Of a stretch of 64,000 nt of DNA, positions 8,166-58,837 are shown in pieces. Position numbers and translations under genes: made by a program. Positions within the stretch are counted from its first letter, which is position 1, and each line of letters starts with the position of its first letter. Origin of the DNA: Hemiscyllium ocellatum (lineage: Eukaryota); assembly GCF_020745735.1 (NCBI RefSeq), contig NW_026867498.1, positions 1,639,822-1,703,821 of the forward strand, written 5' to 3'. The notes under the pieces were generated by a model. It did no database searches and was not told the origin of the DNA. It saw only the letters and a list, made by a program, of their open reading frames with translations.

Positions 8166-9216
8166 TCAATCCCCCTGCGATGGCACGTGAACTCGCTGAT
8201 GCTTCCGCAGGTGGGAGGAGCAGGTGAAGCCCTTCCCGCACTGAGAGCAGATGTACGGCCTCTCCCCGGTGTGGATCCGCTGGTGGGTCAGCAGGGCGGA
8301 GGAAGTGCTGAAGGCCTTCCCACTTCCGGGGCAGCTCAAGGGCCTCTCCCTGGTGTGGACACGCTGGTGCCTCAGCAGGGTGGAGACCTGGGTAAAGGCC
8401 TTCCCGCACTGAGAGCAGGTGTGCGGTCTCTCCCCCGCGTGGACCCACGGTGGGTCAGCAGGTGGGAGGAGCAAGTGAAGCCCTTCCCGCACTGAGAGCA
8501 GGTGAACGGACTCTCCCCGTGTGGATCCGCTGGTGTCTCCGCAGGTTGGAGGAGCAGGTGAGGCCCTTCCCGCACTGAGGGCAGGTGTACGGTCTCTCCC
8601 CCGTGTGGACACGCTGGTGTCTCCGCAGGTTGGAGGAGCAGATGAAGCCCTTCCCACACTGAGAGCAGGTGAACGGCCTCTCCCCGGTGTGGACGTGACG
8701 GTGACTCCGCAGGGTGGTGGAATCGCTGAAGGCCTTCCTACACTCAGGGCAGCTGAAGGGCCTTTCCCCGGTGTGGACAAGCTGGTGCCTCAGCAGGATG
8801 GAGGCCTGGGTAAAGGCCTTTCCGCACTCTGGGCAGCTGAAGGGCCTCTCCCCCGTGTGGACCCGCTGGTGGGTCAGGAGGTTGGAGGAACAGGTGAAGC
8901 CCTTCCCACACTGAGAGCAGGTGAATGGCCTCTCCCCCGTGTGGACATGCTGGTGGGTCAGCAGGGCGGAGGAATTGCTGAAGGCCTTCCCGCACTCAGG
9001 GCAACTGAAGAGCCTCTCCCCCATGTGGCCCCGCTGGTGGGCCAGCAGGTGGGAGGAATACCTGAAGGCCTCCCCGCAGTCAGTGCAGGGGAATGGCCTC
9101 TCCCCGGTGTGACTGCGCCGATGAATCTCCAGGGCAGACAGGAAACGGAAGCCTTTCCCACAGTCCCCACACTTCCACGGTTTCTTCACGCGGCAGGATT
9201 CCTCAGATTTCTCCAT
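8166..9216 (-). pseudogene. C2H2 zinc-finger gene B: 12 finger repeats, two frameshifts after finger 8
   Basis: ATG at 9216 (MEKSEES...KPWKCGDC). Eight in-frame fingers with TGERP linkers. Frameshifts lie near 8515 and 8447. The remaining fingers end HVPSQGD* in another frame. It could still encode a truncated 8-finger protein. Confidence 0.85.
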
Positions 9217-17065: not shown

Positions 17066-17212
17066 CTATTTTGCAAATTGAGACACAGACCTGGACCAGC
17101 GTTTCCAGAGTCTGTCCCCTTCTGGATTCACTCTCTTTTCTTTCAGTTGCTGCAAGTCAACAACTGAACCCCAGAATGAAAAAGACATGGAATGGGAGCA
17201 AAATAGTGCCGT

Positions 17213-17560
17213 ACTCACAGATCTGGGACAGAGGAAGGAATGTGCAGTCTGGGTAAAGCTCTGTCTTTATTCAGAGAGAGAGGATCAGGAGCTGCAGCTT
17301 GAGAAGCTCATGGTCCGACTTCCGCATTCAGACAATGGGCTGACTCTGATTGACAGAAGGACCAGGCTCCTTCCGGTCCTCCAAGGTTGCCTATTGGTCC
17401 ATCAAAAGAAGGTTTCGCGCCTTTTTTGCGTACAGCGATGAGCATGCTCAGTGTTTTGCTGACACTGGTAAGCATGCGCACTGCGTTGCTGACACTGGCA
17501 AACATGCGCAGTATGCTCTATGGGGATGTTGGTGTTCCTGACAGATTTTAAGTGTCCAAA
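17213..17560 (-). promoter_or_regulatory. ZNF promoter module (3x NRF1-like, E2F-like, 2x CCAAT, ETS) plus non-coding exon and intact donor; its ZNF exon is deleted
   Basis: gcatgcgca-type repeats about 30 bp apart, tttcgcgc, ctattgg and ctgattg, cttccgc, and donor ATCT|GTGAGT at 17218. Confidence 0.65.
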
Positions 17561-18019
17561 TGCTAACGGGGGAAAAAAAGAGAGCCACAATTTTTTTTTC
17601 CTGCGGCTCGATATTTGATTTCTTTTGCATTTTGTCTGGCTGCTCAACTTTTGTATGTCGTTTCCCCTTGTTGTGGGGGCAAGGCACCGAGACCAGAACT
17701 GGAGGGCATAGGTTTAGGGTGAGAGGGGAAAGATTTCTGAGGGTACTAAGGGGCAATCCTTTCACACAGAGGGTGGTATGTGGATGGAATGAACTGTCAG
17801 ATGACGTGGTGGGGGCTGGTACAATTACATCATCTGGATGGGGATATGAATAGGAAAGATTCAGAGGGATAAGAGGCGACATGCTGGCATCTGGTCGACA
17901 TAGACTGAAGGGTTTGTTTCTGTGCTCTACAGCTCTGTGACTCTATTTTTAGATAGTATGGAAAATAAAGAGCATGAAAGCATGGGAAGTGTTAGAGCAT
18001 GGAGACCATTTCCAGTTCA

Positions 18020-23339: not shown

Positions 23340-23700
23340 ACCCCGTTGGCATTTGGACACTTAAAATCTGTCAGGAACACCAACATCCCCAGAGAGCATA
23401 CTGCGAATGTTTGCTGGTGTCAGCAACGCAGTGCGCATGCAGTCTAGTATCAGCAAAACACTGAGCATGCTCATCGCTGGACGCAAAAAAGGCGCGAGAC
23501 CTTTTTTTGGTTGGCCAATAGGCAATGTTGGAGGACTGGAAGGAGTCTGGTCCTCCTGCCAATCAGAGTCAGCCCATTGTCTGAATGCGGAAGTTGGACC
23601 ATGAACTTCTCAAGCTGCAGCTCCTGATCCTCTCTCTCTGAATAAAGATAGAGCTTTACCCAGACTGCACATTCCTTCCTCTGTCCCAGATCTGAGAGTC
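23340..23700 (+). promoter_or_regulatory. ZNF promoter module upstream of gene C; donor mutated GT>GA
   Basis: gtgcgcatgc, ggcgcgag, ccaatag, ccaatcag and gcggaagt. Reads ccagatct|GAGAGTC at 23694 where paralogues read |GTGAGTAC. Confidence 0.65.
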
Positions 23701-24671
23701 AGGCACTCTCTTATCTCGCCCCCTTTTCCATTTCTTTTTCATTCTGTAGTTCAGTTGTTGACTTGCAGCAACTGAAAGGAAAGAGTGAATTCGGCAGGGA
23801 CAGACTCCGGAAACGTTGATCCAGGTCTGTATCTCAATTGGCAAAATAGTTAGGCAGGAGGCATCAGATGGTGGAGAAGTCGACGAATCGGTTGTAACCC
23901 TTCTTCAGGGCTGGGGCTGGGTGCAGAAGCTGCAGAGAAAAGGGGGTGGGGATGAAGTGGGAAAAGGTCAAGACAGTTAGAGGGTACGACCTGGTTGGTC
24001 AATCGGAGGAATGAATCTTGTTGGTGGCAGGGAGGAGGGCGGGGATGGGAATGGAGTCAGGGAATGGAGAGGGAGGATTTTTGAAATTGGAAAACTCAAC
24101 GTTGAGTCCTTCGGGCTGCAGGCTGCCCGGAAGATGAGGTGTTGTCCCTCCAATTTGCGGTTAGATTGGTTGTGGCAATGGAGGAGGCCAAAGATGGTCA
24201 TGTCAGAAAGTGGGTGGGAAGGAAATTGGAATGGGTGGTTACTGAGAGGTGTGGTCGCCCTCTGCGGGCACAGCTGCCATGCTCAGCGAATCGTTCCCCA
24301 AGTTTGCACTCGCTCTCCGATATAGAGAAGATCGCAATGGCAAATGCAGTACCACAATATGAAGTTATAGCCTTGGCTGTGGAAAAAAAACGCAGAAAGG
24401 AGGTGCATTGTTTAAATGGAGATGTATTTGAATGTGGAGAAAGTGAGAACTGCAGATGCTGGAGATCAGGCTCAAACATTGTGGTACTGGAAGAGCACGG
24501 GAGGTTAGGCAGCATCCGAGGAGCAGGAGAGTTAACGTTTTGGACATGAGCCCTTTATCAGGAATGATGTGTGGATGGACAAAGAGGCCTCAGCATCCTT
24601 CTACACCAGTCACTGTCATTTGTCAGACAGGTGTAGCAAGCAATCAGCAAGGCAAGTGGTATATTAGCAAG

Positions 24672-26793: not shown

Positions 26794-27930
26794 ATGGAGA
26801 AACCTGAGGAATCCCGCCCTGTGGAGAAACCGTGGAAGTGTGGGGACTGTGGGAAAGGCTTCCGTGTCCCGTCTGCCCTGGAGACTCATCGGCGCAGTCA
26901 CACCGGGGAGAGGCCATTCCCTTGCACCGACTGTGGGAAGGCCTTCAGACATTCCTCCCACCTGCTGGCCCACCAGCAGGACCACACGGGGGAAAGGCCC
27001 TTCAGCTGCCCCGAGTGCGGGAAGGCCTTCGTGTTTTTCTCCGCCCTGTTGGCCCATCAGCGGGTCCACACAGGAGAGAGGCCGTTCAGCTGCCCAGAGT
27101 GCGGGCAGGCTTTTACCAACAACTCCACCCTGCTGAGGCACCAGCGGATCCACACGGGGGAAAGGCCCTTCAGCTGCCCTGAGTGTGGGAAGGCCTTCAG
27201 CTATTCCTCCACCCTGCGGAGCCACCGGCGTGTCCACACCGGGGAGAGGCCCTTCAGCTGCCCAGAGTGTGGGAAGGCTTTTACCAACAACTCCACCCTG
27301 ATGAGGCACCAGCAGATCCACACTGGGGAGAGGCCGTACATCTGCTCTCAGTGCGGGAAGGCCTTCAGCAATTCCTACACTCTGCTGACCCACCAGCGTG
27401 TCCACACGGGGGAGAGGCCGTTCACCTGCTCTCAGTGTGGGAAGGGCTTCACCTGCTCCTCCCACCTGCGGAGCCACCAGCGGGTCCACACGGGGGAGAG
27501 GCCCTTCAGCTGCCCCGAGTGCGAGAAGGCTTTTACCAACAACTCCACCCTGCTGACCCACCAGCGTGTCCACACCGGGGAGAGGCCGTTCACCTGCTCA
27601 AAGTGCGGGAAGGGCTTCACCTGCTCCTCCATCCTGCGGAGCCACCAGCGGGTCCACACCGGGGAGAGGCCCTTCAGCTGCCCCGAGTGCGGGAAGGCCT
27701 TCAGCACATCCTCCTCCCTTCTGAAGCACCAGCGGGTCCACACCGAGGAGAGGCCTTACATCTGCTCTCAGTGTGGGAAGGGCTTCAGGTCTTCCTCCAA
27801 CCTGCTGACCCACCGGAGGGTCCACACCGGGGAGAGACCTTACACGTGCTTTCACTGTGGGAAGGGTTTCACCCGCCGCTCCCACCTGCGGAGCCACCAG
27901 CGAGTTCACGTGCCATCGCAGAGGGATTGA
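26794..27930 (+). CDS. C2H2 zinc-finger protein C, 378 aa, 13 fingers, no KRAB/SCAN/BTB domain visible
   Basis: Kozak-like gccATGG at 26794. Uninterrupted ORF of 13 CxxC-x12-HxxxH units with TGERP linkers, ending HVPSQRD*. Confidence 0.9.
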
Positions 27931-37166: not shown

Positions 37167-37580
37167 TCAATCCCCCTGCGATGGCACGTGAACTCGTTGG
37201 TGGCTCCGCAGGTGGGAGGAGCGGGTGAAGCCCTTCCCGCACTGAGAGCAGATGTACGGCCTCTCCCCGGTGTGGATCCGCTGGTGTCTCCGCAGGTGGT
37301 AGGGGCGGGTGAAACCCTTCCCGCACTGAGAGCAGGTGAACGGCCTCTCCCCCGTGTGGACCCGCTGGTGGGTCAGCAGGGCGGAGGAATTGCTGAAGGC
37401 CTTCCCGCACTTGGGGCAGCTGAAGGGCCTCTCCCCCGTGTGGATCTGCTGGTGCCTCATCAGGGAGGAGGTCTGGGTAAAGGCCTTCCCACACAGGGCA
37501 GATGGGAAACGGAAGCCTTTCCCACAGTCCCCACACTTCCACGGTTTCTCCACAGGGCGGGATTCCTCAGGTTTCTCCAT
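37167..37580 (-). CDS. C2H2 zinc-finger gene D, 137 aa, in-frame internal deletion, 3 intact fingers (possible pseudogene)
   Basis: ATG at 37580. Fusion FRFPSAL|[10 protein letters not shown], then three fingers ending HVPSQGD*. Confidence 0.7.
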
Positions 37581-40500: not shown

Positions 40501-40668
40501 CTGATGCCTCCTGCCTAACTATTTTGCCAATTGAGATACAGACCTGGATCAACGTTTCCGGAGTCTGTCCCTGCCGAATTCACTCTTTCCTTTCAGTTGC
40601 TGCAAGTCAACAATTGAATTACAGAATGAAAAAGAAATGGAAAAGGGGGCGAGATAAGAGAGTGCCGT

Positions 40669-41030
40669 ACTCACAGATCTGGGACAGAGGAAGGAATGTG
40701 CAGTCTGGGTAAAGCTCTATCTTTATTCAGAGAGAGAGGATCAGGAGTCGCAGCTTGAGAAGTTCATGGTCCAACTTCCGCATTCAATGGGCTGACTCTG
40801 ATTGGCAGGAGGACCAGTCTCCTTCCAGTCCTCCAACGTTGCCTATTGGTCAATCAAAAGAAGGTCTCGCGCCTTTTTTGCGTCCAGCGATGAGCATGCT
40901 CAGTAGTTTGCTGACACTAGACAGCATGCGCACTGCGTTGCTGACACCAGCAAACATGCGCAGTATGCTCTCTGGGGATGTTGGTGCTCCTGCCAGATTT
41001 TAAGTGTCCAAATGCCAACGGGGTGAAAAG
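40669..41030 (-). promoter_or_regulatory. ZNF promoter module plus exon 1 with intact donor, upstream of gene D
   Basis: Mirror of 23340-23700. Donor GTGAGT at 40674, candidate acceptor at 37990-37989. Confidence 0.65.
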
Positions 41031-44000: not shown

Positions 44001-47000
44001 CCCTTCATCAGGAATGATGCATGGATGTACAAAGGGGCCTCAGCGTCCTTCTCCACCAGTCATCAGACAGATGCACAAGCAATCAGCAAGGCAAGTGGTA
44101 TATTCGGAAGATGAACTGGGATTAGCAGTGGGGATGTCATCCTGCAGTTAGGGGGTCATTGAATATATCCAAGGCTGAGTTCATCTGTTTTTTGAACAAC
44201 AGAGTGTGGATTCTTATGTTGTGTGGATGAGGTGATTTTTTTTGTTGACAGTGGTTTATGTGTTGGATGCAGGTACAATAACCACGTTTAAAGTGGAAGG
44301 CAAGAAAGTTTTAAGACCACGACAGAACAGTTAGTTAGACAGCACAGAAACGGACCCTTCAGCCCTACTATTCCATGCTGACTATGTTTCAGTGCCACTT
44401 GCCAATGTTTGGCCCATATCCCCCCGCACCTTCCCGATTCATGTACTTATCCAAACGTCTTTTAATGGTTGCATCTGTACGTGCATCCACCACTTCCTCT
44501 GGACATTCATTCCATACATGAACCACTCTCTGTTTATGAAAACCTTTTCCAGATTCTGTCCACTTCGTGGATTCATTTCCCTTTCCGTTCGGTTGGTGCA
44601 AGTCAAAAATTGAAGCCCAGAATGAAAAAAAAATGAAAAAGGAGTTGAGAAGAGAGCGGTGTACTGGCGGAGTAAGGAGGTTGCAGTCTGGAACAAACTC
44701 AATCTTCATTCAGAGAGAGGAGCAACACCTTCCGAAGCTCGTGTTCCAGCTTCTGCATTCAGACAACAGGAAGGCTCTGATTGGCAGGAGGACCTATATC
44801 CTTCCGGTCCTCCAGGGCTTCCGATTGGCCCACCAAAAGAAAGTCGCGATGCGTGCGGCGAGGAGCATGCGCAGTATGCTCTCTCGTGATGCTGCTGTCA
44901 CTGACAGAATTTGTGTCCAAGTGTCCAAGAGAAGAAAAAAAAGGGGAGATCCACCCTTTTTTCCCCCCTGTGATATTTACCTTTCCTACACGCCCCATGA
45001 CTTTATAAATCGAAATAAGGTCACCAGTCAACTTGTGGTCGTCGATAGGGCGACCAGAAGTGTACTCAGTACTCTACACGTGGTCTCACCAATATCCTGT
45101 ACAACCTCAATGTGATGTCCCAATTCCTACACTGAACGGTGTGAACAATGAAGGCAAGTGTGCCAAACGCCCCCTTCACCACCCTGTCCAGCAATGATGC
45201 AACTTTCAAAGAACTACGTCCCCGATTTGGAGATGCCGGTGTTGGACTGGGGTGTACGAAGTTAAAATTCACACCACCATTGTCCCCCCCAGTCTTTCTC
45301 TCACCCCACCCTTTGCCCCCCCCCCCCGAGTCTTTTTCTCCTCGTACCATGAAATTGGTTCCGACTGTTGTCGTGGATAAAATGTAGAGAACGACCAGGA
45401 GACGCAGAGAGTTCTTCAAGAAGTAGGTCGTTTATTTGCAAACAAAAAGACCGTGACACTCGAAAAGCAGATTCTCGAATGCCCACAAACCTCAGGGTCT
45501 GTGGTTTTAAAATATCTTTTTTTTAATCATGTTTGTGTTAGCTTATCAGCATGTCCAACTATATTTATCAACGTACCTCAGTCTAGCTACACAATAAGCC
45601 AGTGATGTTAGTTCCCATTATCTCTTTAGTTGTACATTCTACTTCATGTTATTCCAATGTCTCGGTTAGAGATTTAATGTCAGCTTTTGCAACAATGGTC
45701 TTTCATTCTAGACCCTACTTAATATTTTCCTAATGTCATGATTAGATATTTATTGTCAGTAGTTTCAAGCAGGCTGACTCTACTAACAATTAGATATTTA
45801 ATGTCATGTCCCAAATATTTATTGTCCCAATAATGATAGTTAGCAGATGAGGCTAACTTTACTAACTGTGTTATCTCATCTTGCCATAGTGACCTTTCAG
45901 CCTCAACCTTACTCTGCTAATTGATGTAAGAGTGTTCCACTATCCTTTGCAACTGTAGTGGACAGCGAAGGGGGTTACCTCAGATTACAACAGGATCTGG
46001 ACCAGATGGGTCAATGGGCTGAGAAGTGGCAAATGGAGTTTAATTCAGATAAATGCGAGGTGCTGCATTTTGGGAAAGCAAATCTTAGCAGGACTTATAC
46101 ACTTGATGGTGAGGTCCTAGGGAGTGTAGCTGAACAGAGAGACCTTGGAGTGCAGGTTCATAGCTCCTTGAAAGTGGAGTCACAGGTAGAAAAGATAGTG
46201 AAGAAGACGCTTGGTATGCTTTCCTTTATTGGTCAGAGTATTGAGTACAGTAATTGGGAGGTCATGTTGCGGTTGTACAGGACATTGGTTAGGCCACTAT
46301 TGGAATATTGCATGCAATTCTGGTCTCCTTCCTATCGGAAAGATGTTGTGAAACGTGAAAGGGTTCGGAAAATATTTACAAGGATGGTGCCAGTGTTGGA
46401 GGATTTGAGCTATAGGGACAGGCTGGGGCTGATTCACTGGTGCGTCAGAGGCTTGGGGGAGGGTGAGCTTATAGAGGTTTACAAAATTATGAGGGGCATG
46501 GATAGGATAAATAGGCAATGTCTTTTCCCTGGGGAGTCCAGAACTAGAGGGCATAGGTTTAGGGTGAGAGGGGAAAAATATTAAAGAGACCTCAGGAGCA
46601 ACATTTTCATGCAGAGAGTGGTACATGTATGGAATGAGCTGCCAGAGGAAGTGGTGGAGACTGGTACAATTGCAACATTTAAGTGGCATTTGGATGGGTA
46701 TATGAATATGAAGGGTTTGGAGGGATATGGGCCGGGTGCTGGCAAGTGAGACTAGATTGGATGGGGATATCTGGTCGGCATGGACGGGTTGGACCGAAGG
46801 GTGTGTTTCCATGCTGTACATCTCTCTATGACTCTATGAACTGGAAATGGTCTCCATGCTCTAACACTTCCCATGCTTTCATGCTCTTTATTTTCCATAC
46901 TATCTAAAAATAGTCACAGAGCTGTAGAGCACAGAAACAAACCCTTCAGTCTATGCCGACCAGATGCCAGCATGTCGCCTCTTATCCCTCTGAATCTTTC

Positions 47001-47284
47001 CTATTCATATCCCCATCCAGATGATGTAATTGTACCAACCCCCACCACGTCATCTGACAGTACATTCCATACACATACCACCCTCTGTGCAAAAGGATTG
47101 CCCCTTAGTACCCTCAGAAATCTTTCCCCTCTCACCCTAAACCTATGCCCTCCAGTTCTGGTCTCGGTGCCTTGCCCCCACAACAAGGGGAAACGACATA
47201 CAAAAGTTGAACAGCCAGACAAAATGCAAAAGGAATAAAATATCGAGCCGCAGGGAAAAAAAAATTGTGGCTCTATCTTTTTTC

Positions 47285-47645
47285 CCCTGTTGGCATTTGG
47301 ACACTTAAAATCTGTCAGGAACACCAACATCCCCATAGAGCATACTGCGCATGTTTGCCAGTGTCAGCAACGCAGTGCGCATGCTTACCAGTGTCAGCAA
47401 AACACTGAGCATGCTCATTCGCTGTATGCAAAAAAGGCGCGAAACATTCTTTTGATGGACCAATACGCAACCTTGGAGGACCGGAATGAGCCTGGTCCTC
47501 CTGTCAATCAGAGTCAGCCCATTGTCTGAATGCGGAAGTCGGACCATGAGCTTCTCAAGCTGCAGCTCCTGATCCTCTCTCTCTGAATAAAGATAGAGCT
47601 TTACCCAGACTGCACATTCCTTCCTCTGTCCCAGATCTGTGAGTA
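47285..47645 (+). promoter_or_regulatory. ZNF promoter module plus exon 1 with intact donor, upstream of gene E
   Basis: Three tgcgcatg-type sites, ggcgcgaaa, ccaatac, tcaatcag and gcggaagt. Donor at 47639, candidate acceptor ctttttacAG at 50040. Confidence 0.7.
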
Positions 47646-50044
47646 CGGCACTATTTTGCTCCCACTCCATGTCTTTTTCATTCTGGGGTTCAGTTGTTGA
47701 CTTGCAGCAACTGAAAGAAAAGAGTGTGAATCCGGAAGGGGACAGACTCTGGAAACGCTGGTCCAGGTCTGTGTCTCAATTTGCAAAATAGACAGGAGGT
47801 GGAGAAGTCGACGTTTCAGGTGTAACCCTTCCTCGGGGCTGGGGCTGGGGCTGGCTGGAGAAGCTGCAGATGAAGGGGGTGGGAGTGAAGTGGAGATAGG
47901 TCAAGACAGGTAGAGGCTACGACCTGGTTGGTCAATGGGAGGAATGCATGGGATTGCTGGCAAAGAACAAGGAGGGAGGTTTTTTTTGAAATTGGAAAAC
48001 TCAACGTTGAGTCCTTCAGGCTGTAGGCTGCCTGGAAGATGAGGTGTGGTCCCTTCAATTTGCAGTTAGGTTCGTAGTGGCAATGGAGGAGGCCAAAGAT
48101 GGTCATGTCAGAAAAGGGAATTGTAATGGGTGGTGACTGGGAGGTATGGTCGGCTCTGTGGACCCAGCTGTGATGCTCAGTGAACCGTTCCTCAAGTTTG
48201 CGCTCGCTCTCCCCGATATAGAGAGGACCACAATTGGCAAACACAGGACCACGATATGAAATTATAGCTTTGGCTGTGGCAAAGAAAAACAGAAAGGAGG
48301 TGCATTGTTTAAATGGAGATGTATTTGAATGTGGAGAAAGTGAGAACTGCAGATGCTGGAGATCAGGCTCAAACATTGTGGTACTGGAAGAGCACGGTAG
48401 GTTAGGCAGCATCTTAGGAGCAGGAGTGTTGACGTTTTGGGCACGAGCCCTTCATCTAGACTGATGTGTGGATGGGCAAAGAGGCCTCAGTGTCCTCCTA
48501 CTCCAGTCACTGCCAGTTGTCCGACAGATGTAGGAAGCAATCGGCAAGGCAAGCGTTATATTAGCAAGAGGAATTGAGTTCACAAGTGGGATGTCTTCCT
48601 GCAGTTAGGGTGTCATTGAGTATATTCAAGGCTGAGTTCATCTGATTTTTGAACAAAGAAGTGGATGTTTGTGGGGGAAGGCGAGAACATGGTTTAAGAC
48701 CAGTATAGAATGGTTCCAGAGTCATACAGCACAGAAACAGACCCTTTAGTCCAACCTGTCATAGAGATATACAACATGGAAAAAGACCCTTTGGTCCAAC
48801 TCATCCAACTCAACCAACAATCTGGTCCCACCTGTCAGCACCTGGCGCACATCCCTCAAAATCCTTCCCATTCATGTACCCATCCAGATGCCTTTTAAAT
48901 ATTGCAATTGTACTAACCTCCACCTCCGACAGCTCATTCCAAACATGTCCCACCCTCAGTGTGAAAAGGTTGCTCCTCAGATCTCTTCTGTATCTTTCCC
49001 CCCTCACCCTAAACCTATGCCCTCTAGTTCTGGACCCACCCCCTCCTGGGAAAAGACCTTGGCTATTTATCCTATTCATGCCCTTCATAATTTTGTAAAC
49101 CTCTATAAGGTTACTCCTTAGTCTCCAACGCTCCAGGGAAAACAGCCCTAGCCTCCAAATAGAACAAATCCTCCAACCCTGGCAACATCCTTGTAAATTT
49201 TTCTGAACCCTTTCAAGTTTCACAACATCTTCCTGATAGTAAGGAAACCAGAATTGCACACAATATTCCAAATGTGGCCTAACCAATGTCCTGTACAGCC
49301 ACAACATAACTTCCCAAATCCTAAACTCAGAGGATTGGGAGAGTTTTCAAAACCTACAAAAGACAACTGGGAAAGAATAGAGAACAAACCAAACCTTCGA
49401 GGGTCAGCTTGGAGGCATCAAGGTCTCAGGACAGGGGGTGGGGATGATCCCAGCTATGGGCCACATGCCAGCAAATGGGACTAGATTAATTTAGGATATC
49501 TGGTCAGTACAATTGTGTTGGACAGAAGGGTCTGTTTCTGTGCTATGTATCTCTATGACTCTGGCATTTGCCAGAGTCAGGAGGTTCACTTTCTCTCTAC
49601 TTTCAATGTTAATGCCTTGACGTCTCATTTTGCTCCCACCTTCCTGGGGTCGTTAACCATTTTGTGTCTGGTCCTTCCTCAAGAAGCTGCGTGGCAGGTT
49701 CACCCTGAATTGACACTTTCTTTTTGCTTCCCAAAATCAGACCTGCTCACTCTCAGCAGTATCCCAGTGTTGTGAAAGATATTAGCTTTCAGGTGGAGGT
49801 ATCCAAAGTTCAGAGAGACGGCAGTCTTGATGTTTTTGCTTTTCTGTCCCTGTAAGATCCTGAATCAGCACCTTCAGGAGAATTAGTTCGAGCCGAGTGA
49901 GAAGAGAGGGGGAGAGAGAGAGTGGGATGGTGCTTTCAATTTTGTGGAATAACAAAAGAAAAGAATATTCCACAGAAAGTAGAATTGCTTGTTCTGAATT
50001 TCTACCCTGCACTAATGACCTTTGTAATCTCTTTTTACAGAGCA

Positions 50045-50310
50045 CAGTAGCGTCTCGACATACGAACAAACCCGTTCATGTACAAATCGGTTTACGAACA
50101 GGAGCGTACGTAAAATTTTGCTTCAACGTACGTACGAAATTCAAGGTATGAACACAAAAGCTCTCGGGCCCCGCGTGATCTCATTCAGTTCATCTTTGGC
50201 GTGTGCGCTGTGAACAGCCATCCAACCATTCTTACGCTATCCGAACAATGGGAAAAGTTAATTCAGTTCGCGAACTCTTCGGATTAAGTTCCTAAGTCGA
50301 GGCGCTACTG
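50045..50310. mobile_element. Tigger/pogo-like MITE, 266 bp
   Basis: TIRs cagtagcgtctcgacatacgaac and gttcctaagtcgaggcgctactg. Inserted at a TA; the empty site ttttcaaaTActctgc is seen at 9612-9627. Confidence 0.9.
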
Positions 50311-50695
50311 TATTTGAAAATCTGAAGGCGGAAGTTTCAACATCAACAGATGAAGGGCTTAAGCCCGAAACGTTGACTCTCCTACTTCTCGGATGCAGCC
50401 TCACCTGCTGTGCTTTTCCAGCGCCGCACTTTTCAATACTGACTCTCCAGTGTCTGCAGTCCTCACTTTGACGTCAATGTCTGACAGTCACTCAATCCAT
50501 CGGGACCGCAACGGTTTTCATCTATGATTCTGTGAGAAGGAGCAAAGCTTTTTGGTTCCTGTCTAAGTACGTTTTCAGCATCAGCGGGACTGGATGAGAG
50601 ACCCTACCATTGCAGTGCACTGAGTGTGGAGCCTAAAATAACTATACAGCCTGGAAAGAGGAATTCACAGCAGGGAGTGGCTCCACACTTCGGCC

Positions 50696-52084
50696 ATGGA
50701 GAAACGCGAGGAATCCCACCTCTTGGAGAAACCATGGAAGTGTGGTGACTGCGGGAAAGGCTTCCGTTTTCCATCTTCCCTGGAGATTCATCGGCGTAGT
50801 CACACCGGGCAGAGGCCATTCACCTGCCCAGTCTGTGGGGAGGCCTTCAGATATTCCTCCACCCTGCTGACCCACCAGCGGATCCACACGCGGGAGACGC
50901 CCTACAGCTGCCCCGAGTGCGGGAAGGCCTTTACCCAGGTCTCTGGACTGCAAAACCACCAGTGGGTCCACACAGGGGAGAGGTCCTTCAGCTGTCCCGA
51001 GTACAGGAAGGGCTTCAGCAATTCCTCCTCTCTGCTGAGGCACCAGCGGGTCCACACGGGGGAGAGGCCCTTCAGCTGCCCTAAGTGCGGAAAAGCCTTC
51101 AGGGATTCCTCCTCTCTGCTGAGGCACCAGCGGGCCCACACTGGGGAGAGGCCCTTCAGCTGCCCCGAGTGCAGGAAGGCCTTTATCCAGGTCTCTGGAC
51201 TGCTAAACCACCAGTGTGTCCACACAGGGGAGAGGCCGTTCAGGTGCCCAGACTGCAGGAAGGCCTTCAGCAATTCCTCCTCTCTGCTGAGGCACCAGCG
51301 GATCCACACGGGGGAGAGGCCCTTCAGCTGCCCCGAGTGCAGGAAGGCCTTCAGCAATTCCTCTGCCCTGCTGACTCACCGGAGGGTCCACACGGGGGAG
51401 AGGCCCTTCAGCTGCCCCGAGTGCAGGAAGGCCTTCAGCAATTCCTCTGCCCTGCTGAGCCACCAGCGGGTCCAGACGGGGGAGAGGCCCTTCAGCTGCC
51501 CCGAGTGCAGGAAGGCCTTCAGCAATTCCTCTGCCCTGCTGAGCCACCAGCGGATCCACACGGGGGAGAGGCCATTCAGCTGCCCCGCGTGCAGGAAGGC
51601 CTTCAGCAATTCCTCTGCCCTGCTGAGCCACCAGCGGGTCCAGACGGGGGAGAGGCCCTTCAGCTGCCCCGAGTGCGGGAAGGCCTTCAGCAATTCCCCC
51701 AACCTGCTGAGGCACCAGCGGGTCCACACAGGGGAGAGGCCCTTCAGCTGCCCCGAGTGCAGGAAGGCCTTCAGCAATTCCTCCGCCCTGCTGACTCACC
51801 GGAGGGTCCACACGGGGGAGAGGCCCTTCAGCTGTCCTGAGTGCGGGAAGGCCTTTACCCGCTCCTCCCACCTGCTGAGGCACCAGCGGGTCCACACTGG
51901 GGAGAGGCCCTTCAGCTGCCCCGAGTGCGGGAAGGCCTTCAGCAATTCCTCTGACAGGCTGACCCACCAGCGGGTCCACACTGGCGAGAGGCCATTCCCC
52001 TGCCCCAAGTGTGGGAAGGCCTTCATCAGCTCCTCCCACCTCCGGAGGCACCAGCGAGTTCACATTCCATCGCAGGGGGATTGA
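50696..52084 (+). CDS. C2H2 zinc-finger protein E, 462 aa, 16 finger repeats (3 lack a canonical Zn ligand)
   Basis: gccATGG start and an open ORF. Repeat 4 has CPEY and repeats 9 and 11 have HQRVQ. Ends HIPSQGD*. Confidence 0.92.
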   Translation: MEKREESHLLEKPWKCGDCGKGFRFPSSLEIHRRSHTGQRPFTCPVCGEAFRYSSTLLTHQRIHTRETPYSCPECGKAFTQVSGLQNHQWVHTGERSFSCPEYRKGFSNSSSLLRHQRVHTGERPFSCPKCGKAFRDSSSLLRHQRAHTGERPFSCPECRKAFIQVSGLLNHQCVHTGERPFRCPDCRKAFSNSSSLLRHQRIHTGERPFSCPECRKAFSNSSALLTHRRVHTGERPFSCPECRKAFSNSSALLSHQRVQTGERPFSCPECRKAFSNSSALLSHQRIHTGERPFSCPACRKAFSNSSALLSHQRVQTGERPFSCPECGKAFSNSPNLLRHQRVHTGERPFSCPECRKAFSNSSALLTHRRVHTGERPFSCPECGKAFTRSSHLLRHQRVHTGERPFSCPECGKAFSNSSDRLTHQRVHTGERPFPCPKCGKAFISSSHLRRHQRVHIPSQGD

Positions 52085-53568
52085 AGGAGTGAAGGCTGAA
52101 AGTCCAGTGAATAATGACAATCAGCCCAGCTCCCGGGACTCCCGGGTTTGAATCCCGCTGCAGCAGATGGCGCTATACAGGGTATGGGTTGAAATTGCTG
52201 AGTGAGGCAATGCTTCCTCCGGGTTACGGCTCTACCAAGGATCCAATTAGAAAGGGACACCTCGGTGCTGACCAATAGTGAAGACAGTGAGGTTGGGTGG
52301 GCGTATAAGCGTGAGTGAGTGTGCTTTGATCTTGAGCTGTTTAAAAAGCAGCTACTTTTTCTCTGCCTTTTTGCTGAGGGGGATTTGAAGCTTTAACAAA
52401 GTTGGGTCACAATGAAGGTGAAGTGAACTTAACGCCGAGCTCAGACTCTCATTGAAAGCTTTGAGCTCCAAGAGGTTTTGGTTTTAAAGCTACTCATTCC
52501 TTTCAGCCTCCTGCACTAAGCTTCCCATGTCGCTTATCAGTTGGATCAGTGAATGAGCAGCCAATATCGTTAGAAATTGTAAATGTTTCAGGAGTGCAGA
52601 GTGTGAGAATTCTATTCGAGAGGGTTCAGTAAAGATTTACCAGGATGTTGCCAAGACTGGAGGGAGGGTTTGAGTTATCAGGAGAAGCTGGGACTTTATT
52701 CACTGGAGCACAGGAAATTAAGGGGTGCCATCATTGAGATTGATAAAATCATGGGGAGTGGAGGTAAGGGCTCTTCCTTAGCGTAGGGGAGCTCAAGTCT
52801 AGGGGGCACATTTCTTTAAAGTGAGAGGAGAGAGATTTAAAAGGAACCTGAGCGGCAAGGTTTTGACAGAAGGCAGTTTACATGTGGAATGAAGTTGGAT
52901 GAGGATGTGGTAGATGCAGATGAAGTTCCAAATTTTAAATGACATTTGGATGAGTACATGAATAGGAAGGTTTAGAGGGACATGGGCCAAACGCAGACAA
53001 ATGGGATCTTATTGAAGTGGCCTTATTGAAAGCAGTAGAATTCTGAAAGGGGCTTGACAGGATTGATGCAGATAAAATGCTCCTTTGTGGGGTGAGTCAT
53101 AGAATGCCAACAATGTGGGTGCAGGCCATTCAGCCCATTTATTCCATGCTAGCCCTTCGAAGAGCATCTCGCCCACATCCATCCCATGGCCCATCAACCC
53201 TAAATTGCACATCTAGGGTCACTATGGGTAATTTACCACAGCCAATCCACCCGAACCTTTACACTCTAATCTATAAATTACCTTCTCAAAAATGACATTT
53301 AAATGTAGAGTTTTTCTCTAAGCAAAACGTCAGTCTGACTCAACATTCGGGTGCAGTCAGAATTCACACTTATTGTCAGAAAAGCTCTGCATTTGAATGA
53401 CATTCTTGAGTAGGTAACAAAAAACAAGTTCTGGGATTAACATGCTAAAGAACAGAAACCCATTCTAAAGGTGAAAAGATTTAATCTAAAATTGTTTGAT
53501 GTGTCACATTTCCATGACACTAGAATCCTTTCGATATAAATTGTGATCATGATCTCATTCTCCACAGC

Positions 53569-53603
53569 CACCTGATGAAGGAGCGGCGCTCCGAAAGCTA
53601 GTG
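53569..53603 (+). ncRNA. Minimal hammerhead motif in a third Penelope-derived family
   Basis: cac-CTGATGA-a-ggagc-ggc-gctcc-GAAA-GCTA-gtg: intact core, palindromic AGCT, stem I cac/gtg. Confidence 0.7.
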
Positions 53604-54844: not shown

Positions 54845-55035
54845 ATAGAATCCCTGCAGTGTGGGAAGAGGCCTTTCGGACCAACCAGTCCACACCAACT
54901 CTCCGAAGAGCAACCCATTCAGACCCATTTCCCTATGACTCTACACTTACTTCTGAGTAATGCACCTAACCTACACATCCCTGATTGCAATGGGGAATTC
55001 ACCTAACCTGCACATCTTTGGATTGTGGGAGTAAA
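54845..55035 (-). mobile_element. HE1/V-SINE 3' portion
   Basis: Reverse complement has the V-core cccacaatccaaagatgtgcaggttaggtgaatt and the CR1-derived tail gtgtggactggttggtccgaaaggcct. Confidence 0.75.
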
Positions 55036-55097
55036 ACCCACGGCCCTTGAGCCCAGCATTAAAAATAAATGGAAAACGGCAGTGGCAAAAGAGAGCG

Positions 55098-55455
55098 CCG
55101 TACTCACAGAAGTGGGACAAAGGAGGGAAGTTGCAGTCCGGCGTGAAGGTGAATCTTCATTCATGGCAGAGAATCAGCAGCAGGTTCAGAAACTCATGGT
55201 GCACCTTCCGCATTCAGACACCATGGGGGGTTCTGATTGGCAGGAGGACCGGTCTTCTTCTGGTCCTCCTTGGCATTCTATTGGTTCGTCAAAAGTAGTT
55301 CGCGCGCCTTTTCGGCGGACAGCAAGAAGCATGCGCAGTGATTTGCTGACACCAGCAAATATACGTTATGCCTTACTAACACCGAGGAGCATGCGCAGTA
55401 TGCTCTGTGGAGATGCCGTTATTACTGACGTTTTTAAGCGTCCAAATGCAAATCG
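55098..55455 (-). promoter_or_regulatory. Further copy of the ZNF promoter module with intact donor, pointing toward the 3' end of gene E
   Basis: gcatgcgcag twice, ttcgcgc, ctattgg, ctgattgg, cttccgc and gtactcac (donor). Confidence 0.6.
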
Positions 55456-55936
55456 GAAAAAAAAGGATAGAATCACATTTTTTCCTGTGGCTTAAGATTT
55501 TATTCCTTTTGCATTCTCTCTGGCTGTTCCATACATGTACCACCCTCTGTGTGAAAAGACTGCCCCTTAGGTCTCTTTTATATCTTTCCCCTCTCACCCG
55601 AAACCACGTCATTCCAGATGAAGGGCTTGTGCCGATAGGTCAACTTTCCTACTCCTTGGATGCTGCCTGACCTGCTGTGCTTTTTCAGCACTGCACTTTT
55701 TGACTCTGATCTCCAGCATTAGCAGTCCTCACTTTCTCCACTTCCCAATATATCACCATTTAAACAATACACCTCATTTCTGCTTTTTTTTCCACAGCAA
55801 AGACTATAACTTCACACTGTGGTACTGCACTTGCCACATGTTTGAGGCACAGACCTGGACCAGCTTTTCCAGAGTCTGGCCTCTTTCTGGATTCACTCCC
55901 TTTCTTTGCAGTTGCTGCAAGTCAACAATTGGATCC

Positions 55937-56166: not shown

Positions 56167-57670
56167 AACAATTGGATCCCAGCAAGAAAATAAAAGAAAT
56201 AGAAAAGGGAGTGAGAGTAGTGTGTGCTGTTGGACAGACGAAGGAAATTACAGTCTTGGATGAATCTCAATCTTCATTCAAAGAGGGAGGAGCAGCAGCA
56301 GCTTCAGAAGCTCATGGGTCAAGATTGAAGTCGTGCTGGAAAAGCACAGCTGGTCAGGCAGCATCCGAAGAGCAGGAAAATCGACATCTCGGATTCAGAC
56401 AATAGGGCTGCTCTGAATGGTAGGAGGACTAGACTCCCTCCGGTGTTCCAGTGCTCCTCATTGGTCCGGCCGCTAATACTATTCTTCCTATTACAGGGCG
56501 GCCACAGGTGTACTCAGGACTCCAGAAAAATGGCCTCACCAACATCCTGTACAACCTCAACATAGAACAAAGAAAATTTACAACCCAGCAATAGGCCCTC
56601 CAGCCCTCCAAACCTGAGCTGATCCAAATCCCCTGTCTAAACCTATCGCACAATTCCTGAATCTGTATCCATCTGTTCTCCAATGACTCATGCATCTGTC
56701 CAGATGCACCTTAAATGAATCTACCGTCCCTGCCTCTACTACCTCTGCTGGCAATGCGTTCCAGACACTTATCACCGTCTGAATAATGTACTTTCTGTGT
56801 GCATCTCCAACATGATGTCCCAACACCTGTACTCAGCATGTGAACAATGAAGGCAAGTGTGCTGAACACCTTCTTCACCCCCCTGATCTACCAGTGATGT
56901 AACTGCCACGAACAATGAACCTGAACACCTCCAGGTCTTTGTTCCACAACACGACTCGGGCCCTACCATTACCTGCTCAAGTCTTGCCCTCCTTTATTTT
57001 AGCAAAATGCAACTCCTCACTGATATCCGTACCCCTCTCATACACACACGCGCTCTCTCAGACATACACATGCACCACCCTCTCAACACACACACCCTCT
57101 CGCAAGTTCATACTCCATCACAATCTCACTTTATCAAGCAGGCACACATGCTCTCACACACACTTCCCTGATGAAGGGCGTTTCCCCGGAACGTCAATCT
57201 TCCTGCTCCTTGGATGCTGCCTGACTTGCTGCAGTACCACACACTCAATCCTAAACCTATTACCCTCTAGTTCTGGACTGCCCCATCCAAAGGAAAATAT
57301 CACATCCATTTACCCTATCCATGCCCTTCATGATGATATAAAAGCATATAAGGTCACTCCTCAGACTCTGGCAAGCTGCGGAAAACAGTCCCAACCTGAA
57401 CTTGTCTCTCCTCACCCGGGTCACCAAGACACATACCTGAGGTGGTAAAGTCTGCTCCCTCTCTGGATTCACTCCAGTTGCTACAAGTGAGCCTGCTCCA
57501 TCATTCATTAAGATCATGGCTGATCTATCCATCGTCTCATCTCCTTCTCCCTGCACTGCCGCAAGGAACCCCTTAATTCCCTTACCAGGCCAAATCCCAC
57601 CCAACTGTGTCTTGAATATACTTAATGAAGCTGCCTCTATTGCTTCCTTGGCCAGAGTATTCCATAGATT

Positions 57671-57763: not shown

Positions 57764-58837
57764 TATTCCATAGATTCACGACCCTCTGGGAAAAGCAGTT
57801 CCTCATCTCTGTCTGAAAGCTACTCCCTCTAACCTGGAGGCCTAGTGTCACCCACTAGCAGAAATGACCGGACAAGGTAGGACTTCATTCCCACAGTGCA
57901 ATGACATTGGGAAGATGTTTCCATCGGTAGGAGAGATGAGGACCAGAGGACACAGCTTTAAGAATAAAGTGAAAACCTTCAGGAACAGAGATAAACGATG
58001 TCTCCTTTTCTGCTGACAGCGAGGAGCATGGACAATGTATTGGTGACATGAGCGAGCAGGTGCACTGTTGTTCACACCGAGGAGCAGTCGCAATGTGCTC
58101 TGTGGCGATGCTGGTGTTGTTGACAGATGTTAAGTGTTCAAATGCCAAGAGGAGAAATAAAGGGTAGAGCCACAGTTTTTTTTTCCCCTATGAGGCTCAA
58201 CATTTTATAGCTGGCTGCTCAACTTTTTCTAAAATGTCTTTTCCCCAGAGTAGGGGTGAGGTTCACAACTAGAGGGCATAGATTTTGGGTGAGAGCAGAA
58301 GGATAGAAAAGGTACCGCAGGGGCAACTTTTCCATGCAGAGGATGGTGCATGTATGAAATGAGCTGCGAGAGGAAGCAGTGGGGGCTGGTATAACTACAA
58401 CATTTAAAAGGCATCTGGATAGATATATGAATATAAAGGGTTCAGAGGGATATGAGCCAAGTGCTGGCAAATGGGACTACATTCATTTAGGATATCTGGT
58501 TGGCATGGACAGGTTGCACCAAGTGAATGTGTTCCCATGCTGTACAACTTTGTGACTCAATAATAAAAAAGTATATTTTTCAAAAACCAAACTATCTCCA
58601 TGTTAACAAGGCTTAGTTCACCACATACTTTACTAACCATTCTCAACAGGTCCTGCCCCTTCAATGACTGAGGAACATATACATGTTGGGGCATAGTATC
58701 CTTCACTAGTATTTACACACTACCCTCAGCAATTGCACAAGTAACAGCAAAGGGCAAACAGCACAAGGATTAAACACACAGTGAGGGGTAAACAGCACAA
58801 GCGCCAGTAAAAGCAGATGGAAAGTGAGTGTAAAATA

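What the first reader, a model, noticed from the sequence alone, without database searches (positions are those of the whole stretch)
47285..52084. Recurrent ZNF promoter module (NRF1x3, E2F, CCAATx2, ETS, short non-coding exon, GTGAGT) defines a two-exon gene model
Seen: a module of about 350 bp occurs at 17.2-17.6, 19.95-20.2, 23.3-23.7, 40.7-41.0, 44.65-44.9, 47.3-47.6 and 55.1-55.45 kb, with a remnant at 58.0-58.15 kb. It has GCATGCGCA-type sites in 30-bp tandem units, TTTCGCGC, two CCAAT boxes, GCGGAAGT and then a donor. Four copies point to a conserved acceptor 2.4-2.7 kb away, which precedes the ZNF exon where that exon survives. Known: NRF1, NF-Y, E2F and ETS combinations mark TATA-less housekeeping or cell-cycle promoters, and NRF1 binding is methylation sensitive. 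Inference: the family is co-regulated, possibly in a methylation-responsive way.
Basis: partly seen in the sequence, partly recalled or inferred. Interest (0 to 1): 0.7.

Follow-up and report, generated by a model that had tools for sequence, protein, structure and literature searches.

The report
Shared 5' end of shark ZNF paralogs
The repeated 350-450 bp module is real, but it is most simply the upstream region and short non-coding first exon of one zinc-finger gene copied many times by segmental duplication in a shark genome; this is ordinary for such clusters, and its promoter role is untested.

Summary
The window is not human. One product (37170-37580, minus strand) is on record exactly in the Hemiscyllium ocellatum assembly GCA_020745735.1.

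All eight listed module copies exist, and there is a ninth at 56.19-56.49 kb. However, the window is one large inverted duplication, 94-97% identical. 17.2/47.3, 23.3/40.7 and 19.9/44.7 kb are therefore mirror pairs. That leaves about six older lineages (A-F).

Only two lineages (A, B) still carry the unit module, 2.4-2.7 kb intron, acceptor and C2H2 exon. The others are truncated remnants with ragged, differing ends, so they are not a transposon or LTR.

The motif reading is only partly right:
- There is no full NRF1 palindrome, only TGCGCATG half-sites.
- TTTCGCGC occurs only in the A pair.
- The second CCAAT is TCAAT in the focal copy.
- The modules are not CpG islands (o/e 0.39-0.63; 0.82 in D).
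- The named motifs are no better conserved than the spacers.
- One donor (23.7 kb) is mutated.

In support, the acceptor with about 130 nt of intron, and the promoter core, recur in a cow shark ZNF locus. There the core lies on the opposite strand.

Verdict: probable family promoter plus 5' exon, spread by gene duplication. Low novelty. No transcript data could be obtained.

The parts
47285..47534 (+). Promoter-like part of module copy A2 (the focal copy)
   Evidence: blastn and nhmmer copies; alignment A1; CpG o/e 0.49, not a CpG island
47344..47415 (+). 30-bp tandem units (2.4 copies), each carrying TGCGCATG or TGAGCATG. These are NRF1-like half-sites, not full palindromes
   Evidence: TRF. 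YGCGCAYGY occurs 10 times in the window, all inside modules, and GCGCATGCGC occurs 0 times
47437..47444 (-). TTTCGCGC (E2F-like), present only in the A1/A2 pair
   Evidence: Motif scan; column conservation 0.72, the lowest of the named motifs
47460..47464 (+). CCAAT box 1, identical in A, B, C, D and F
   Evidence: conservation 1.00
47475..47501 (.). Inverted repeat GGAGGACC ... GGTCCTCC around a CCGGAA(G/T) core, among the best-conserved blocks
   Evidence: arms 0.93 and 0.97
47504..47508 (+). Second box: TCAAT here and in A1, CCAAT in B, C and D. The 44-bp spacing to box 1 has no indels in any copy
47520..47539 (+). CATTGTCTGAATGCGGAAGT: invariant TCTGAAT followed by the ETS-like GCGGAAGT
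47535..47638 (+). Putative non-coding exon 1. The 5' end is inferred and the 3' end is set by the donor. It contains an 8-codon upstream ORF at 47546-47572
   Evidence: AATAAA inside it is derived (AATGAA in C, D and F)
47639..50040 (+). Putative intron 1 (2402 nt), from GTGAGT to TTTTTACAG. It carries LINE-like (48758-49317) and SINE-like (48337-48457) fragments
49812..50040 (+). Conserved 3' intron block plus acceptor. It is present at all six exon-2 copies, and about 130 nt of it is conserved in Heptranchias perlo
50041..50315 (+). Tc1/mariner-type MITE (terminal inverted repeats CAGTAGCG...; TA target site) inserted a few bases after the acceptor. It is absent from the copies at 9.6, 26.4 and 38.0 kb. 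CpG o/e up to 1.6
50336..50480 (+). SINE-like dispersed repeat inside the exon-2 leader of every family copy. It is absent from the H. perlo locus
   Evidence: at least 20 copies in the window
50696..52084 (+). Z5: intact 462-aa C2H2 array with no N-terminal effector domain. Start context GGCCATGGAG is conserved in all copies
17197..17571 (-). Module A1, mirror of A2. Its exon-2 equivalent (starting at 14818) is cut off at 14603 and the ZNF exon is missing
23341..23707 (+). Module B1, upstream of the intact Z3 ORF. Its donor is mutated (GAGAGT)
26794..27930 (+). Z3: intact 378-aa C2H2 array. The acceptor precedes exon 2, which starts at 26383
40661..41023 (-). Module B2, mirror of B1, with an intact GTGAGT donor
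37170..37580 (-). Z4: 136-aa in-frame contracted array (723 bp shorter than Z3). Its exact product is on record in Hemiscyllium ocellatum GCA_020745735.1
19944..20192 (+). Module C1 (mirror C2 at 44670-44928, minus strand): degenerate, with one tandem unit, the donor deleted and no ZNF exon
55094..55449 (-). Module D: old copy (76% to A2) with all blocks and a GTGAGT donor, CpG o/e 0.82. There is no acceptor or ZNF exon downstream on its strand
56187..56493 (-). Module F (not listed in the finding): 3' half only. A SINE-like insertion disrupts the ETS site. It is followed by pieces of the intron's 5' part
57985..58212 (-). Module E: 5' half only, keeping about 300 bp of the upstream flank shared with B
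8461..9216 (-). Z2: frameshifted array (251 aa, then out of frame) with the conserved acceptor block at 9606-9852. No module lies upstream of it

Best explanation
The module is the 5' end of one lineage-specific shark poly-C2H2 zinc-finger gene that has no effector domain. It comprises a TATA-less proximal promoter region (two CCAAT boxes 44 bp apart, a conserved inverted repeat, an ETS-like GCGGAAG and upstream TGCGCATG repeats). A roughly 100-nt non-coding first exon and a GT donor follow.

The module recurs because whole gene units were copied by tandem and inverted segmental duplication. A unit is the module, a 2.4-2.7 kb intron, the acceptor and the single large zinc-finger exon. Units were then broken by deletions and transposon insertions.

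Shown: the copies, their mirror-pair relationship, their ragged ends, the linkage to the acceptor and ZNF exon in two lineages, and the age of the acceptor block.

Inferred: that transcription starts in the module and that exon 1 is spliced to the acceptor.

Any co-regulation of the paralogs would simply be inherited. NF-Y-type and ETS-type factors are the more likely binders. NRF1 and E2F are doubtful.
For: - Nine copies are detected at E 1e-62 to 1e-143.
- The large inverted duplication explains three of the pairs.
- A and B units are homologous along their whole length, from about 450 bp upstream of the module to about 90 bp past the stop codon.
- Orphan copies carry different amounts of adjacent unit sequence: E has 300 bp of upstream flank, C about 100 bp of intron, and F pieces of the intron's 5' part. 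This fits broken gene copies.
- The acceptor block is present at all six exon-2 copies. About 130 nt of it, plus the AG and the first bases of exon 2, are conserved at 75-78% in Heptranchias perlo. That equals the identity of the coding fingers, while the rest of the intron does not align.
- CCAAT box 1, both arms of the inverted repeat, box 2 and TCTGAAT are the best-kept blocks, and their spacing is invariant.
- The core 18-mer and an 11-mer each occur once in the 26.7-kb H. perlo locus. They are co-linear and lie about 2 kb from its acceptor.
- The start context GGCCATGGAG is conserved.
Against: - No transcript, CAGE or junction evidence could be obtained. DNA of the closest annotated sharks was not retrievable.
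- The modules are CpG-poor.
- Named motifs are not better conserved than spacers. A-B identity in the module is matched by many intron stretches, which suggests gene conversion rather than constraint.
- B1, the copy upstream of the intact Z3 ORF, has lost the donor GT.
- The predicted leaders are long and carry 6-9 upstream ATGs.
- Two ZNF exons (Z1, Z2) have no module upstream.
- In H. perlo the core lies on the strand opposite to the ZNF exon.
- NCBI's annotation of this region has a 1141-aa model on the plus strand spanning more than 20 kb, rather than simple two-exon genes.
Confidence: 0.6

Rival explanations
1. The module is inert passenger DNA. It is simply part of a recently duplicated and gene-converted block, the motif matches are incidental, and the real start sites of the ZNF transcripts lie elsewhere, or most copies are pseudogenes.
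For: - CpG o/e is 0.39-0.63, close to the window median of 0.39.
- The named motifs show no excess conservation.
- A-B identity is patchy at 80-99% everywhere.
- The B1 donor is broken.
- The leaders are long and rich in upstream ATGs.
- Z1 and Z2 are frameshifted.
Against: - The module is the only alignable piece kept in the old copies C and D at 74-76% identity.
- Block spacing is invariant, and CCAAT1 and TCTGAAT are perfectly kept.
- The core recurs in a shark that, from general knowledge, diverged more than 200 million years ago.
- The conserved acceptor implies an upstream exon somewhere.
Confidence: 0.25
2. The module is a mobile element: a solo LTR, a SINE or another transposon carrying its own promoter, which spread independently of the ZNF genes.
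For: - There are nine copies in 64 kb.
- AATAAA lies downstream of CCAAT boxes in A and B.
- An ERV fragment lies nearby.
- Several copies have no ZNF exon.
Against: - The ends of homology differ between copies: E from about 46950, D 47209-47690, C 47278-47755, F from 47474.
- AATAAA is derived, since C, D and F have AATGAA.
- I noticed no terminal repeats, target-site duplications or primer-binding site when reading the alignments and flanks, but no dedicated search was run.
- True dispersed repeats in the same window behave differently, with 20-35 or more scattered pieces on both strands.
- Orphan copies drag along neighbouring unit sequence.
Confidence: 0.05
3. The module is a promoter, but it is bidirectional or belongs to another transcript (a non-coding or antisense RNA). 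Its orientation relative to the ZNF exon would then not be essential.
For: - In H. perlo the conserved core is on the strand opposite to the adjacent ZNF exon.
- CCAAT, ETS and GC-box promoters are often bidirectional (general knowledge).
- A1 and C1 lie head to head, 2.4 kb apart.
- Modules D, E and F point away from any acceptor.
Against: All three surviving units in the window have the same orientation, a conserved donor on that strand and a fixed distance to the acceptor. These trace to one ancestral unit, so they count as a single data point.
Confidence: 0.1

Closest known systems
Paralogous promoters and 5'UTR exons of tandemly amplified C2H2 zinc-finger gene clusters, such as primate KRAB-ZNF clusters on chromosome 19 and the zebrafish chromosome 4 ZNF arrays (from general knowledge, not tested here)
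   Same: A lineage-specific cluster grown by segmental duplication. Each unit carries its upstream region, a short non-coding first exon and one large exon encoding all fingers. Arrays expand and contract in 84-bp steps, and many copies decay.
   Different: No KRAB, SCAN or BTB exon lies between exon 1 and the finger exon. The promoter is CpG-poor rather than a CpG island. The whole cluster segment forms a large palindrome.
TATA-less NF-Y/ETS promoters with two CCAAT boxes
   Same: Two CCAAT boxes at a fixed spacing, an ETS-like GCGGAAG close to the presumed start, and no TATA box.
   Different: The spacing is 44 bp, whereas my recollection is roughly 32-33 bp for classical cell-cycle promoters (not checked here). 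There is no CpG island, the start site is unknown, and box 2 is mutated in the focal copy.
NRF1 (alpha-Pal) target promoters
   Same: TGCGCATG cores are repeated three times upstream, and they occur only in the modules.
   Different: The defining palindrome GCGCATGCGC is absent from every copy. Only one half-site is present in each unit.
Retroviral or LTR-retrotransposon long terminal repeats acting as promoters
   Same: CCAAT boxes are followed by a short transcribed stretch that contains AATAAA in two lineages.
   Different: The ends are ragged and AATAAA is not ancestral. No terminal repeats, target-site duplications or primer-binding site were noticed on reading, though none was searched for. 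The copies are linked to gene-unit sequence.

Membership tests
C2H2 poly-zinc-finger gene | Tandem C2H2 fingers with TGERP-type linkers encoded in one exon | tested here: met
   Pfam zf-C2H2 at E 4.9e-106 and zf-H2C2_2 at E 2.1e-131, 15 stretches in the 462-aa ORF.
KRAB-, SCAN- or BTB-type ZNF gene | An N-terminal effector domain | tested here: not met
   The ORFs start [16 protein letters not shown] directly before the first finger, and no such domain appears in the Pfam scan. Upstream coding exons were not searched exhaustively.
RNA polymerase II promoter with NF-Y/CCAAT boxes | A conserved CCAAT pentamer with suitable flanks | tested here: met
   Box 1 is invariant in five lineages. Box 2 (GCCAATCAGAG) is intact in B, C and D and mutated in A and F.
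RNA polymerase II promoter with NF-Y/CCAAT boxes | A transcription start site about 60-100 bp downstream of the boxes | not testable with these tools
   No CAGE, RACE or transcript data were available. Exact-product look-ups found no transcript contigs.
CpG-island housekeeping promoter | CpG observed/expected of at least 0.6 together with raised G+C over several hundred bp | tested here: not met
   A and B copies have o/e 0.39-0.52 at 49-51% GC. C reaches 0.62-0.63 over only about 250 bp at 53% GC, and D 0.82 at 51% GC. The window median is 0.39.
NRF1 target promoter | The palindromic site GCGCATGCGC, or a close match with both GCGC halves | tested here: not met
   There are no occurrences in the window. 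The sites are TGCGCATG(C/T)T, matching 6-8 of 10 positions.
E2F-regulated promoter | TTTSGCGC conserved near the start site | tested here: not met
   An exact site occurs only in A1/A2. B and D match 7 of 8 positions. This is the least conserved of the named motifs at 0.72.
LTR or other transposable element | Fixed termini shared by all copies | tested here: not met
   The homology ends differ in every old copy.
LTR or other transposable element | Terminal repeats or TG..CA ends, target-site duplications, and a primer-binding site next to an LTR | not tested
   No dedicated search was run. None was noticed when reading the alignments and flanks. The AATAAA in A and B is not ancestral.
Two-exon gene model (exon 1, intron, ZNF exon) | A GT donor and an AG acceptor conserved among paralogs | tested here: inconclusive
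   The donor is intact in A1, A2, B2 and D, broken in B1 and deleted in C and F. The acceptor is kept in all six copies and in H. perlo. Other AG candidates lie nearer the ATG.
Two-exon gene model (exon 1, intron, ZNF exon) | Spliced transcripts joining the two exons | not testable with these tools
   No RNA data were available.

The most novel reading that the evidence does not exclude
The module core and the acceptor block may belong to an ancient cis-regulatory cassette shared across sharks. It would have been co-amplified with KRAB-less poly-ZNF genes since before the split of galeomorph and squalomorph sharks. The core is CCAAT, the GGAGGACC/GGTCCTCC inverted repeat, a second CCAAT and CATTGTCTGAA. 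The acceptor block is about 130 nt, longer than splicing alone needs. Hundreds of fast-evolving ZNF genes would then be held under one common control, possibly orientation-independent.
Probability: 0.25. Interest if true: 0.45.

Novelty: new member of a known kind. Interest (0 to 1): 0.22.

Why it matters
If the module is the family promoter, it gives a usable gene model for a class of shark ZNF genes that automatic annotation handles poorly. That class has a non-coding exon 1, a roughly 2.5-kb intron and one finger exon. In the public annotation of this region there is a 137-aa single-exon gene and a 1141-aa model spanning more than 20 kb. The module would also be a simple marker for counting live and dead copies.

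The wider point is modest. Paralogs in a duplicated cluster share their promoter by descent, so 'co-regulation' needs no special mechanism. The one feature worth following is the deep conservation of the acceptor block and the promoter core between distant sharks.

Tried and rejected
1. Word-index protein search with the full 462-aa ORF was swamped by generic ZNFs of at most 58% identity, with no lineage signal. Restricting the search to the N-terminal leader worked.

2. Fetching DNA of related loci failed because the files were too large: Chiloscyllium, Mustelus, Heterodontus and Hemiscyllium. Only Heptranchias perlo was retrievable.

3. Exact-product look-ups for Z5, Z3 and Z2, done in the hope of finding transcript contigs, found nothing on record.

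4. A metagenome scan for the 20-nt core gave 0 hits.

5. Rfam found no family anywhere in the window.

6. Profile and Smith-Waterman searches of the whole module against the H. perlo locus were not significant. Only the two short core blocks match.

7. LTR reading rejected: ragged ends and a derived AATAAA.

8. An apparent circular permutation of unit pieces around D, F and C turned out to be hits to two dispersed repeats, LINE-like and SINE-like.

9. CpG-island reading rejected.

10. Motif-versus-spacer conservation showed no excess. The coordinates were off by one for two motifs and were corrected.

11. ORFs in the palindrome centre and in the introns had no Pfam hits.

12. The large profile search of protein representatives was not used, because the protein family was not in question.

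Full report
SOURCE

The window has no N runs. It is a vertebrate C2H2 zinc-finger cluster. It is not human, and nothing in it was treated as human.
- The N-terminal leader [16 protein letters not shown] finds its best matches only in sharks: Chiloscyllium, Scyliorhinus, Heterodontus, Heptranchias, Mustelus, Pristiophorus and Hemiscyllium.
- The product of 37170-37580 (minus strand) is on record exactly in NCBI GCA_020745735.1 on a 3.07-Mb contig. That is the same assembly that encodes the protein named 'Hemiscyllium ocellatum'.
- Human proteins that appeared in the hit list were not fetched, saved or compared.

THE OBSERVATION

The module is real. blastn of 47285-47660 against the window and a profile built from the copies (E 1e-62 to 1e-143) give nine copies:

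| Copy | Coordinates | Note |
|---|---|---|
| A2 | 47285-47660 (+) | focal copy |
| A1 | 17571-17197 (-) | 97.6% to A2 |
| B1 | 23341-23707 (+) | 91.6% to A2 |
| B2 | 41023-40661 (-) | 91.6% to A2 |
| C1 | 19944-20192 (+) | degenerate |
| C2 | 44928-44670 (-) | mirror of C1 |
| D | 55449-55094 (-) | 76% to A2 |
| E | 58152-58004 (-) | 5' half only |

The 20-nt core GGTCCTCCTGYCAATCAGAG occurs seven times against none expected.

The copies are not independent. Self-alignment shows that the window is one large inverted duplication:
- 10617-14605 pairs with 64000-60031 (94%).
- 14603-20694 pairs with 50257-44181 (97%).
- 20693-26880 pairs with 43659-37494 (96%).

So A1/A2, B1/B2 and C1/C2 are mirror images, and about six older lineages remain.

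WHAT THE COPIES BELONG TO

Five zinc-finger exons are present:
- Z1 at 203 down to 1 (-), frameshifted.
- Z2 at 9216-8461 (-), frameshifted near its end.
- Z3 at 26794-27930 (+), 378 aa, intact.
- Z4 at 37580-37170 (-), 136 aa, an in-frame contraction.
- Z5 at 50696-52084 (+), 462 aa, intact, 15 fingers by Pfam.

A conserved 230-bp block that ends in a pyrimidine tract and AG precedes each of them. It also lies at 15043-14818.

Units A and B are homologous along their whole length, from about 450 bp upstream of the module through the intron to about 90 bp past the stop codon. Introns are 2402, about 2400, 2689 and 2686 nt. So the 'recurrent module that defines a gene model' is, in independent terms, two paralogous gene units (A-Z5 and B-Z3, with its mirror B2-Z4) plus remnants.

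The remnants keep different amounts of neighbouring unit sequence:
- E keeps about 300 bp of upstream flank.
- C keeps about 100 bp of intron.
- F is followed by pieces of the intron's 5' part.
- D keeps about 40 bp of intron.

No acceptor block lies near C, D, E or F. The left arm has lost the equivalent of 50257-60031, which is why A1 has no finger exon. Z1 and Z2 have the acceptor block but no module upstream.

TRANSPOSON OR PROMOTER?

The ends of homology differ from copy to copy. The AATAAA inside 'exon 1' of A and B reads AATGAA in C, D and F, so it is not an ancestral poly(A) signal. I noticed no terminal repeats, target-site duplications or primer-binding site when reading the alignments and flanks, but I ran no dedicated search for them.

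True dispersed repeats in the same window look quite different:
- A SINE-like piece of 120-145 bp has at least 20 scattered copies.
- A LINE-like piece of about 590 bp has at least 35 fragments.

I therefore reject the transposon reading, with one limit: no genome-wide search was possible.

MOTIF CONTENT

- TRF confirms a 30-bp unit with 2.4 copies at 47344-47415.
- YGCGCAYGY occurs ten times in the window, always inside modules. The NRF1 palindrome GCGCATGCGC occurs nowhere, so each unit has one half-site.
- TTTCGCGC is exact only in A1/A2.
- CCAAT box 1 is identical in A, B, C, D and F.
- Box 2 is GCCAATCAGAG in B, C and D but TCAAT in A1/A2, the focal copy.
- GCGGAAGT is kept in A and B, is GCGGAAGG in D, and is lost in C and F.

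Conservation by column among the six lineages:

| Block | Conservation |
|---|---|
| CCAAT box 1 | 1.00 |
| TCTGAAT | 1.00 |
| Inverted-repeat arms GGAGGACC / GGTCCTCC | 0.93 / 0.97 |
| CCAAT box 2 | 0.92 |
| E2F-like site | 0.72 |

Taken together, the named motifs are no better conserved than the rest of the promoter part: 0.858 against 0.841, a difference reached by 110 of 255 circular shifts.

A-versus-B identity is patchy, at 80-99% along the whole unit. Intron stretches are as conserved as the module, which looks like gene conversion rather than focused constraint.

The modules are not CpG islands. Observed/expected CpG is 0.39-0.63 (0.82 in D) against a window median of 0.39. The CpGs shared by most lineages are those in the first TGCGCATG, in GGCGCG and in GCGGAAG. 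Most of the changes at the other shared CpG sites are to TG or CA.

SPLICING AND LEADERS

- The GTGAGT donor is intact in A1, A2, B2 and D.
- B1, upstream of the intact Z3 ORF, reads GAGAGT.
- C and F have lost the donor.

Taken exon by exon, exon 1 is about 104 nt if transcription starts at the ETS-like site, and it holds an 8-codon upstream ORF. The exon-2 leaders are 408-655 nt and hold five to eight upstream ATGs. Other AG candidates lie nearer the ATG, for example TTTTCAG at 50572-50578.

One early script joined the two segments locally only to count ATGs, and one search repeated the count segment by segment.

COMPARISON WITH A DISTANT SHARK

The only related locus whose DNA could be fetched is Heptranchias perlo JAYJKY010001828.1 (L001).
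- The last 130 nt or so of the intron, the AG and the first bases of exon 2 align at 75-78% (L001 15259-15390). That is as high as the finger-coding DNA, while the rest of the intron does not align.
- The SINE-like insert in the leader is absent there.
- The stretch that is now leader in the window still reads as zinc fingers in H. perlo.
- The window family's ATG corresponds to a Leu codon in a finger helix.

So the acceptor is old, and the long leader is a recent result of decay of the N-terminal fingers plus insertions.

The whole module does not align to L001. However, GGTCCTCCAACCAATCGGAG (13371-13390) and CATTGTCTGAA (13303-13313) each occur exactly once in 26.7 kb. They are co-linear, 57 nt apart and about 2 kb from the acceptor (expected 0.00 and 0.04). 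Both lie on the strand opposite to the finger exon. I cannot explain this orientation from one locus. A bidirectional promoter, a lost head-to-head neighbour and a local inversion are all possible.

PUBLIC ANNOTATION

In GCA_020745735.1, Z4 is a single-exon gene of 137 residues. A 1141-aa model on the window's plus strand spans at least 27167-47580. Z3, Z5 and Z2 are not on record as separate products. The ranges shown appear to be coding ranges only, so they say nothing about non-coding first exons.

CONCLUSION

The most likely reading (about 0.6) is that the module is the proximal promoter and non-coding first exon of one shark poly-ZNF gene. It was spread by segmental and inverted duplication, and many copies are now broken.
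- CCAAT-binding (NF-Y-type) and ETS-type factors are the plausible regulators.
- The NRF1 and E2F assignments and the methylation-responsive idea are not supported by what could be tested.
- Shared regulation, if any, is inherited rather than a designed feature.

This is an ordinary property of a duplicated gene cluster. Its novelty is that of a new member of a known kind. The deep conservation of the acceptor block and of the short promoter core is the only part that deserves follow-up.

Noticed in passing
window 10617-29039 and 36069-64000: The window is one large inverted duplication (palindrome) with arms 94-97% identical. The arm homology reaches the right-hand edge of the window, so the arms probably extend beyond it. 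The left arm lacks the equivalent of 50257-60031.
   Followed up: partly
window 50041-50315 (mirror 14818-14603): A Tc1/mariner-type MITE of about 265 bp, with terminal inverted repeats CAGTAGCG(T/C)CTCGAC and a TA target site. It is inserted a few bases after the exon-2 acceptor of unit A only. Its CpG o/e is 1.4-1.6, which suggests a young insertion. The left-arm deletion breakpoint lies inside it.
   Followed up: partly
window 50336-50480, 26410-26553, 9454-9596, 435-579, and at least 15 other sites: A SINE-like repeat of 120-145 bp (core ...CTCCTGCTCCTCGGATGCTGCCTGACCTGCTGTGCTTTTCCAG...) sits in the exon-2 leader of every family copy and is absent from the Heptranchias locus. Another copy is inserted into the ETS site of module F (around 56335-56368).
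   Followed up: partly
window 11041-11538 (+) and 12834-13151 (+); mirrored near 60-64 kb: A fragment of a gamma-type endogenous retrovirus. One ORF has an MLV-type integrase C-terminal domain (E 4e-12), and another matches the Env transmembrane part (TLV_coat, E 3e-6). The 5' part is missing. A CpG-rich stretch at 13.7-14.6 kb may be its 3' LTR.
   Followed up: partly
window 37170-37580 (-) versus 26794-27930 (+): Z4 is an in-frame contraction of its mirror copy Z3, shorter by 723 bp or about 8.6 finger repeats. It leaves an intact 136-aa ORF. This looks like unequal exchange between 84-bp finger repeats after the inverted duplication.
   Followed up: partly
window 26600-26793, 50500-50695; L001 15500-15760: The stretch just upstream of the ATG is the wreck of two older N-terminal fingers that still read as fingers in Heptranchias. 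The present ATG (GGCCATGGAG) aligns with a CTG (Leu) codon in a finger helix there.
   Followed up: partly
window 23693-23700: B1, the module upstream of the intact Z3 ORF, has GAGAGT where its mirror copy B2 and copies A and D have the GTGAGT donor.
   Followed up: yes
L001 13303-13390 (-), Heptranchias perlo: The two best-conserved core blocks of the module occur once each and co-linear, about 2 kb from the conserved acceptor. They lie on the strand opposite to the ZNF exon, among GC-boxes and CCGGAA cores.
   Followed up: partly
window 30300-36100: The centre of the palindrome holds a block of about 5.6 kb with strong G-over-C skew (+0.26 to +0.38). It is flanked by two direct copies of the SINE-like repeat (30364-30435 and 35995-36066). 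Long minus-strand ORFs (219-300 aa) have no Pfam match. It is probably an unclassified retroelement.
   Followed up: partly
window about 27167-47580 (+): The public annotation of the same assembly places a 1141-aa gene model on the plus strand across this whole stretch. It may chain several finger exons (a guess from the summed ORF lengths). Its sequence could not be retrieved.
   Followed up: no
window 52130-52175 and equivalents after Z2, Z3 and Z4: A tRNA-like stretch (GGGACTCCCGGGTTTGAATCCCGCC) lies within about 50-90 bp after the stop codon of every finger exon. It suggests a tRNA-derived SINE in the shared 3' flank.
   Followed up: no
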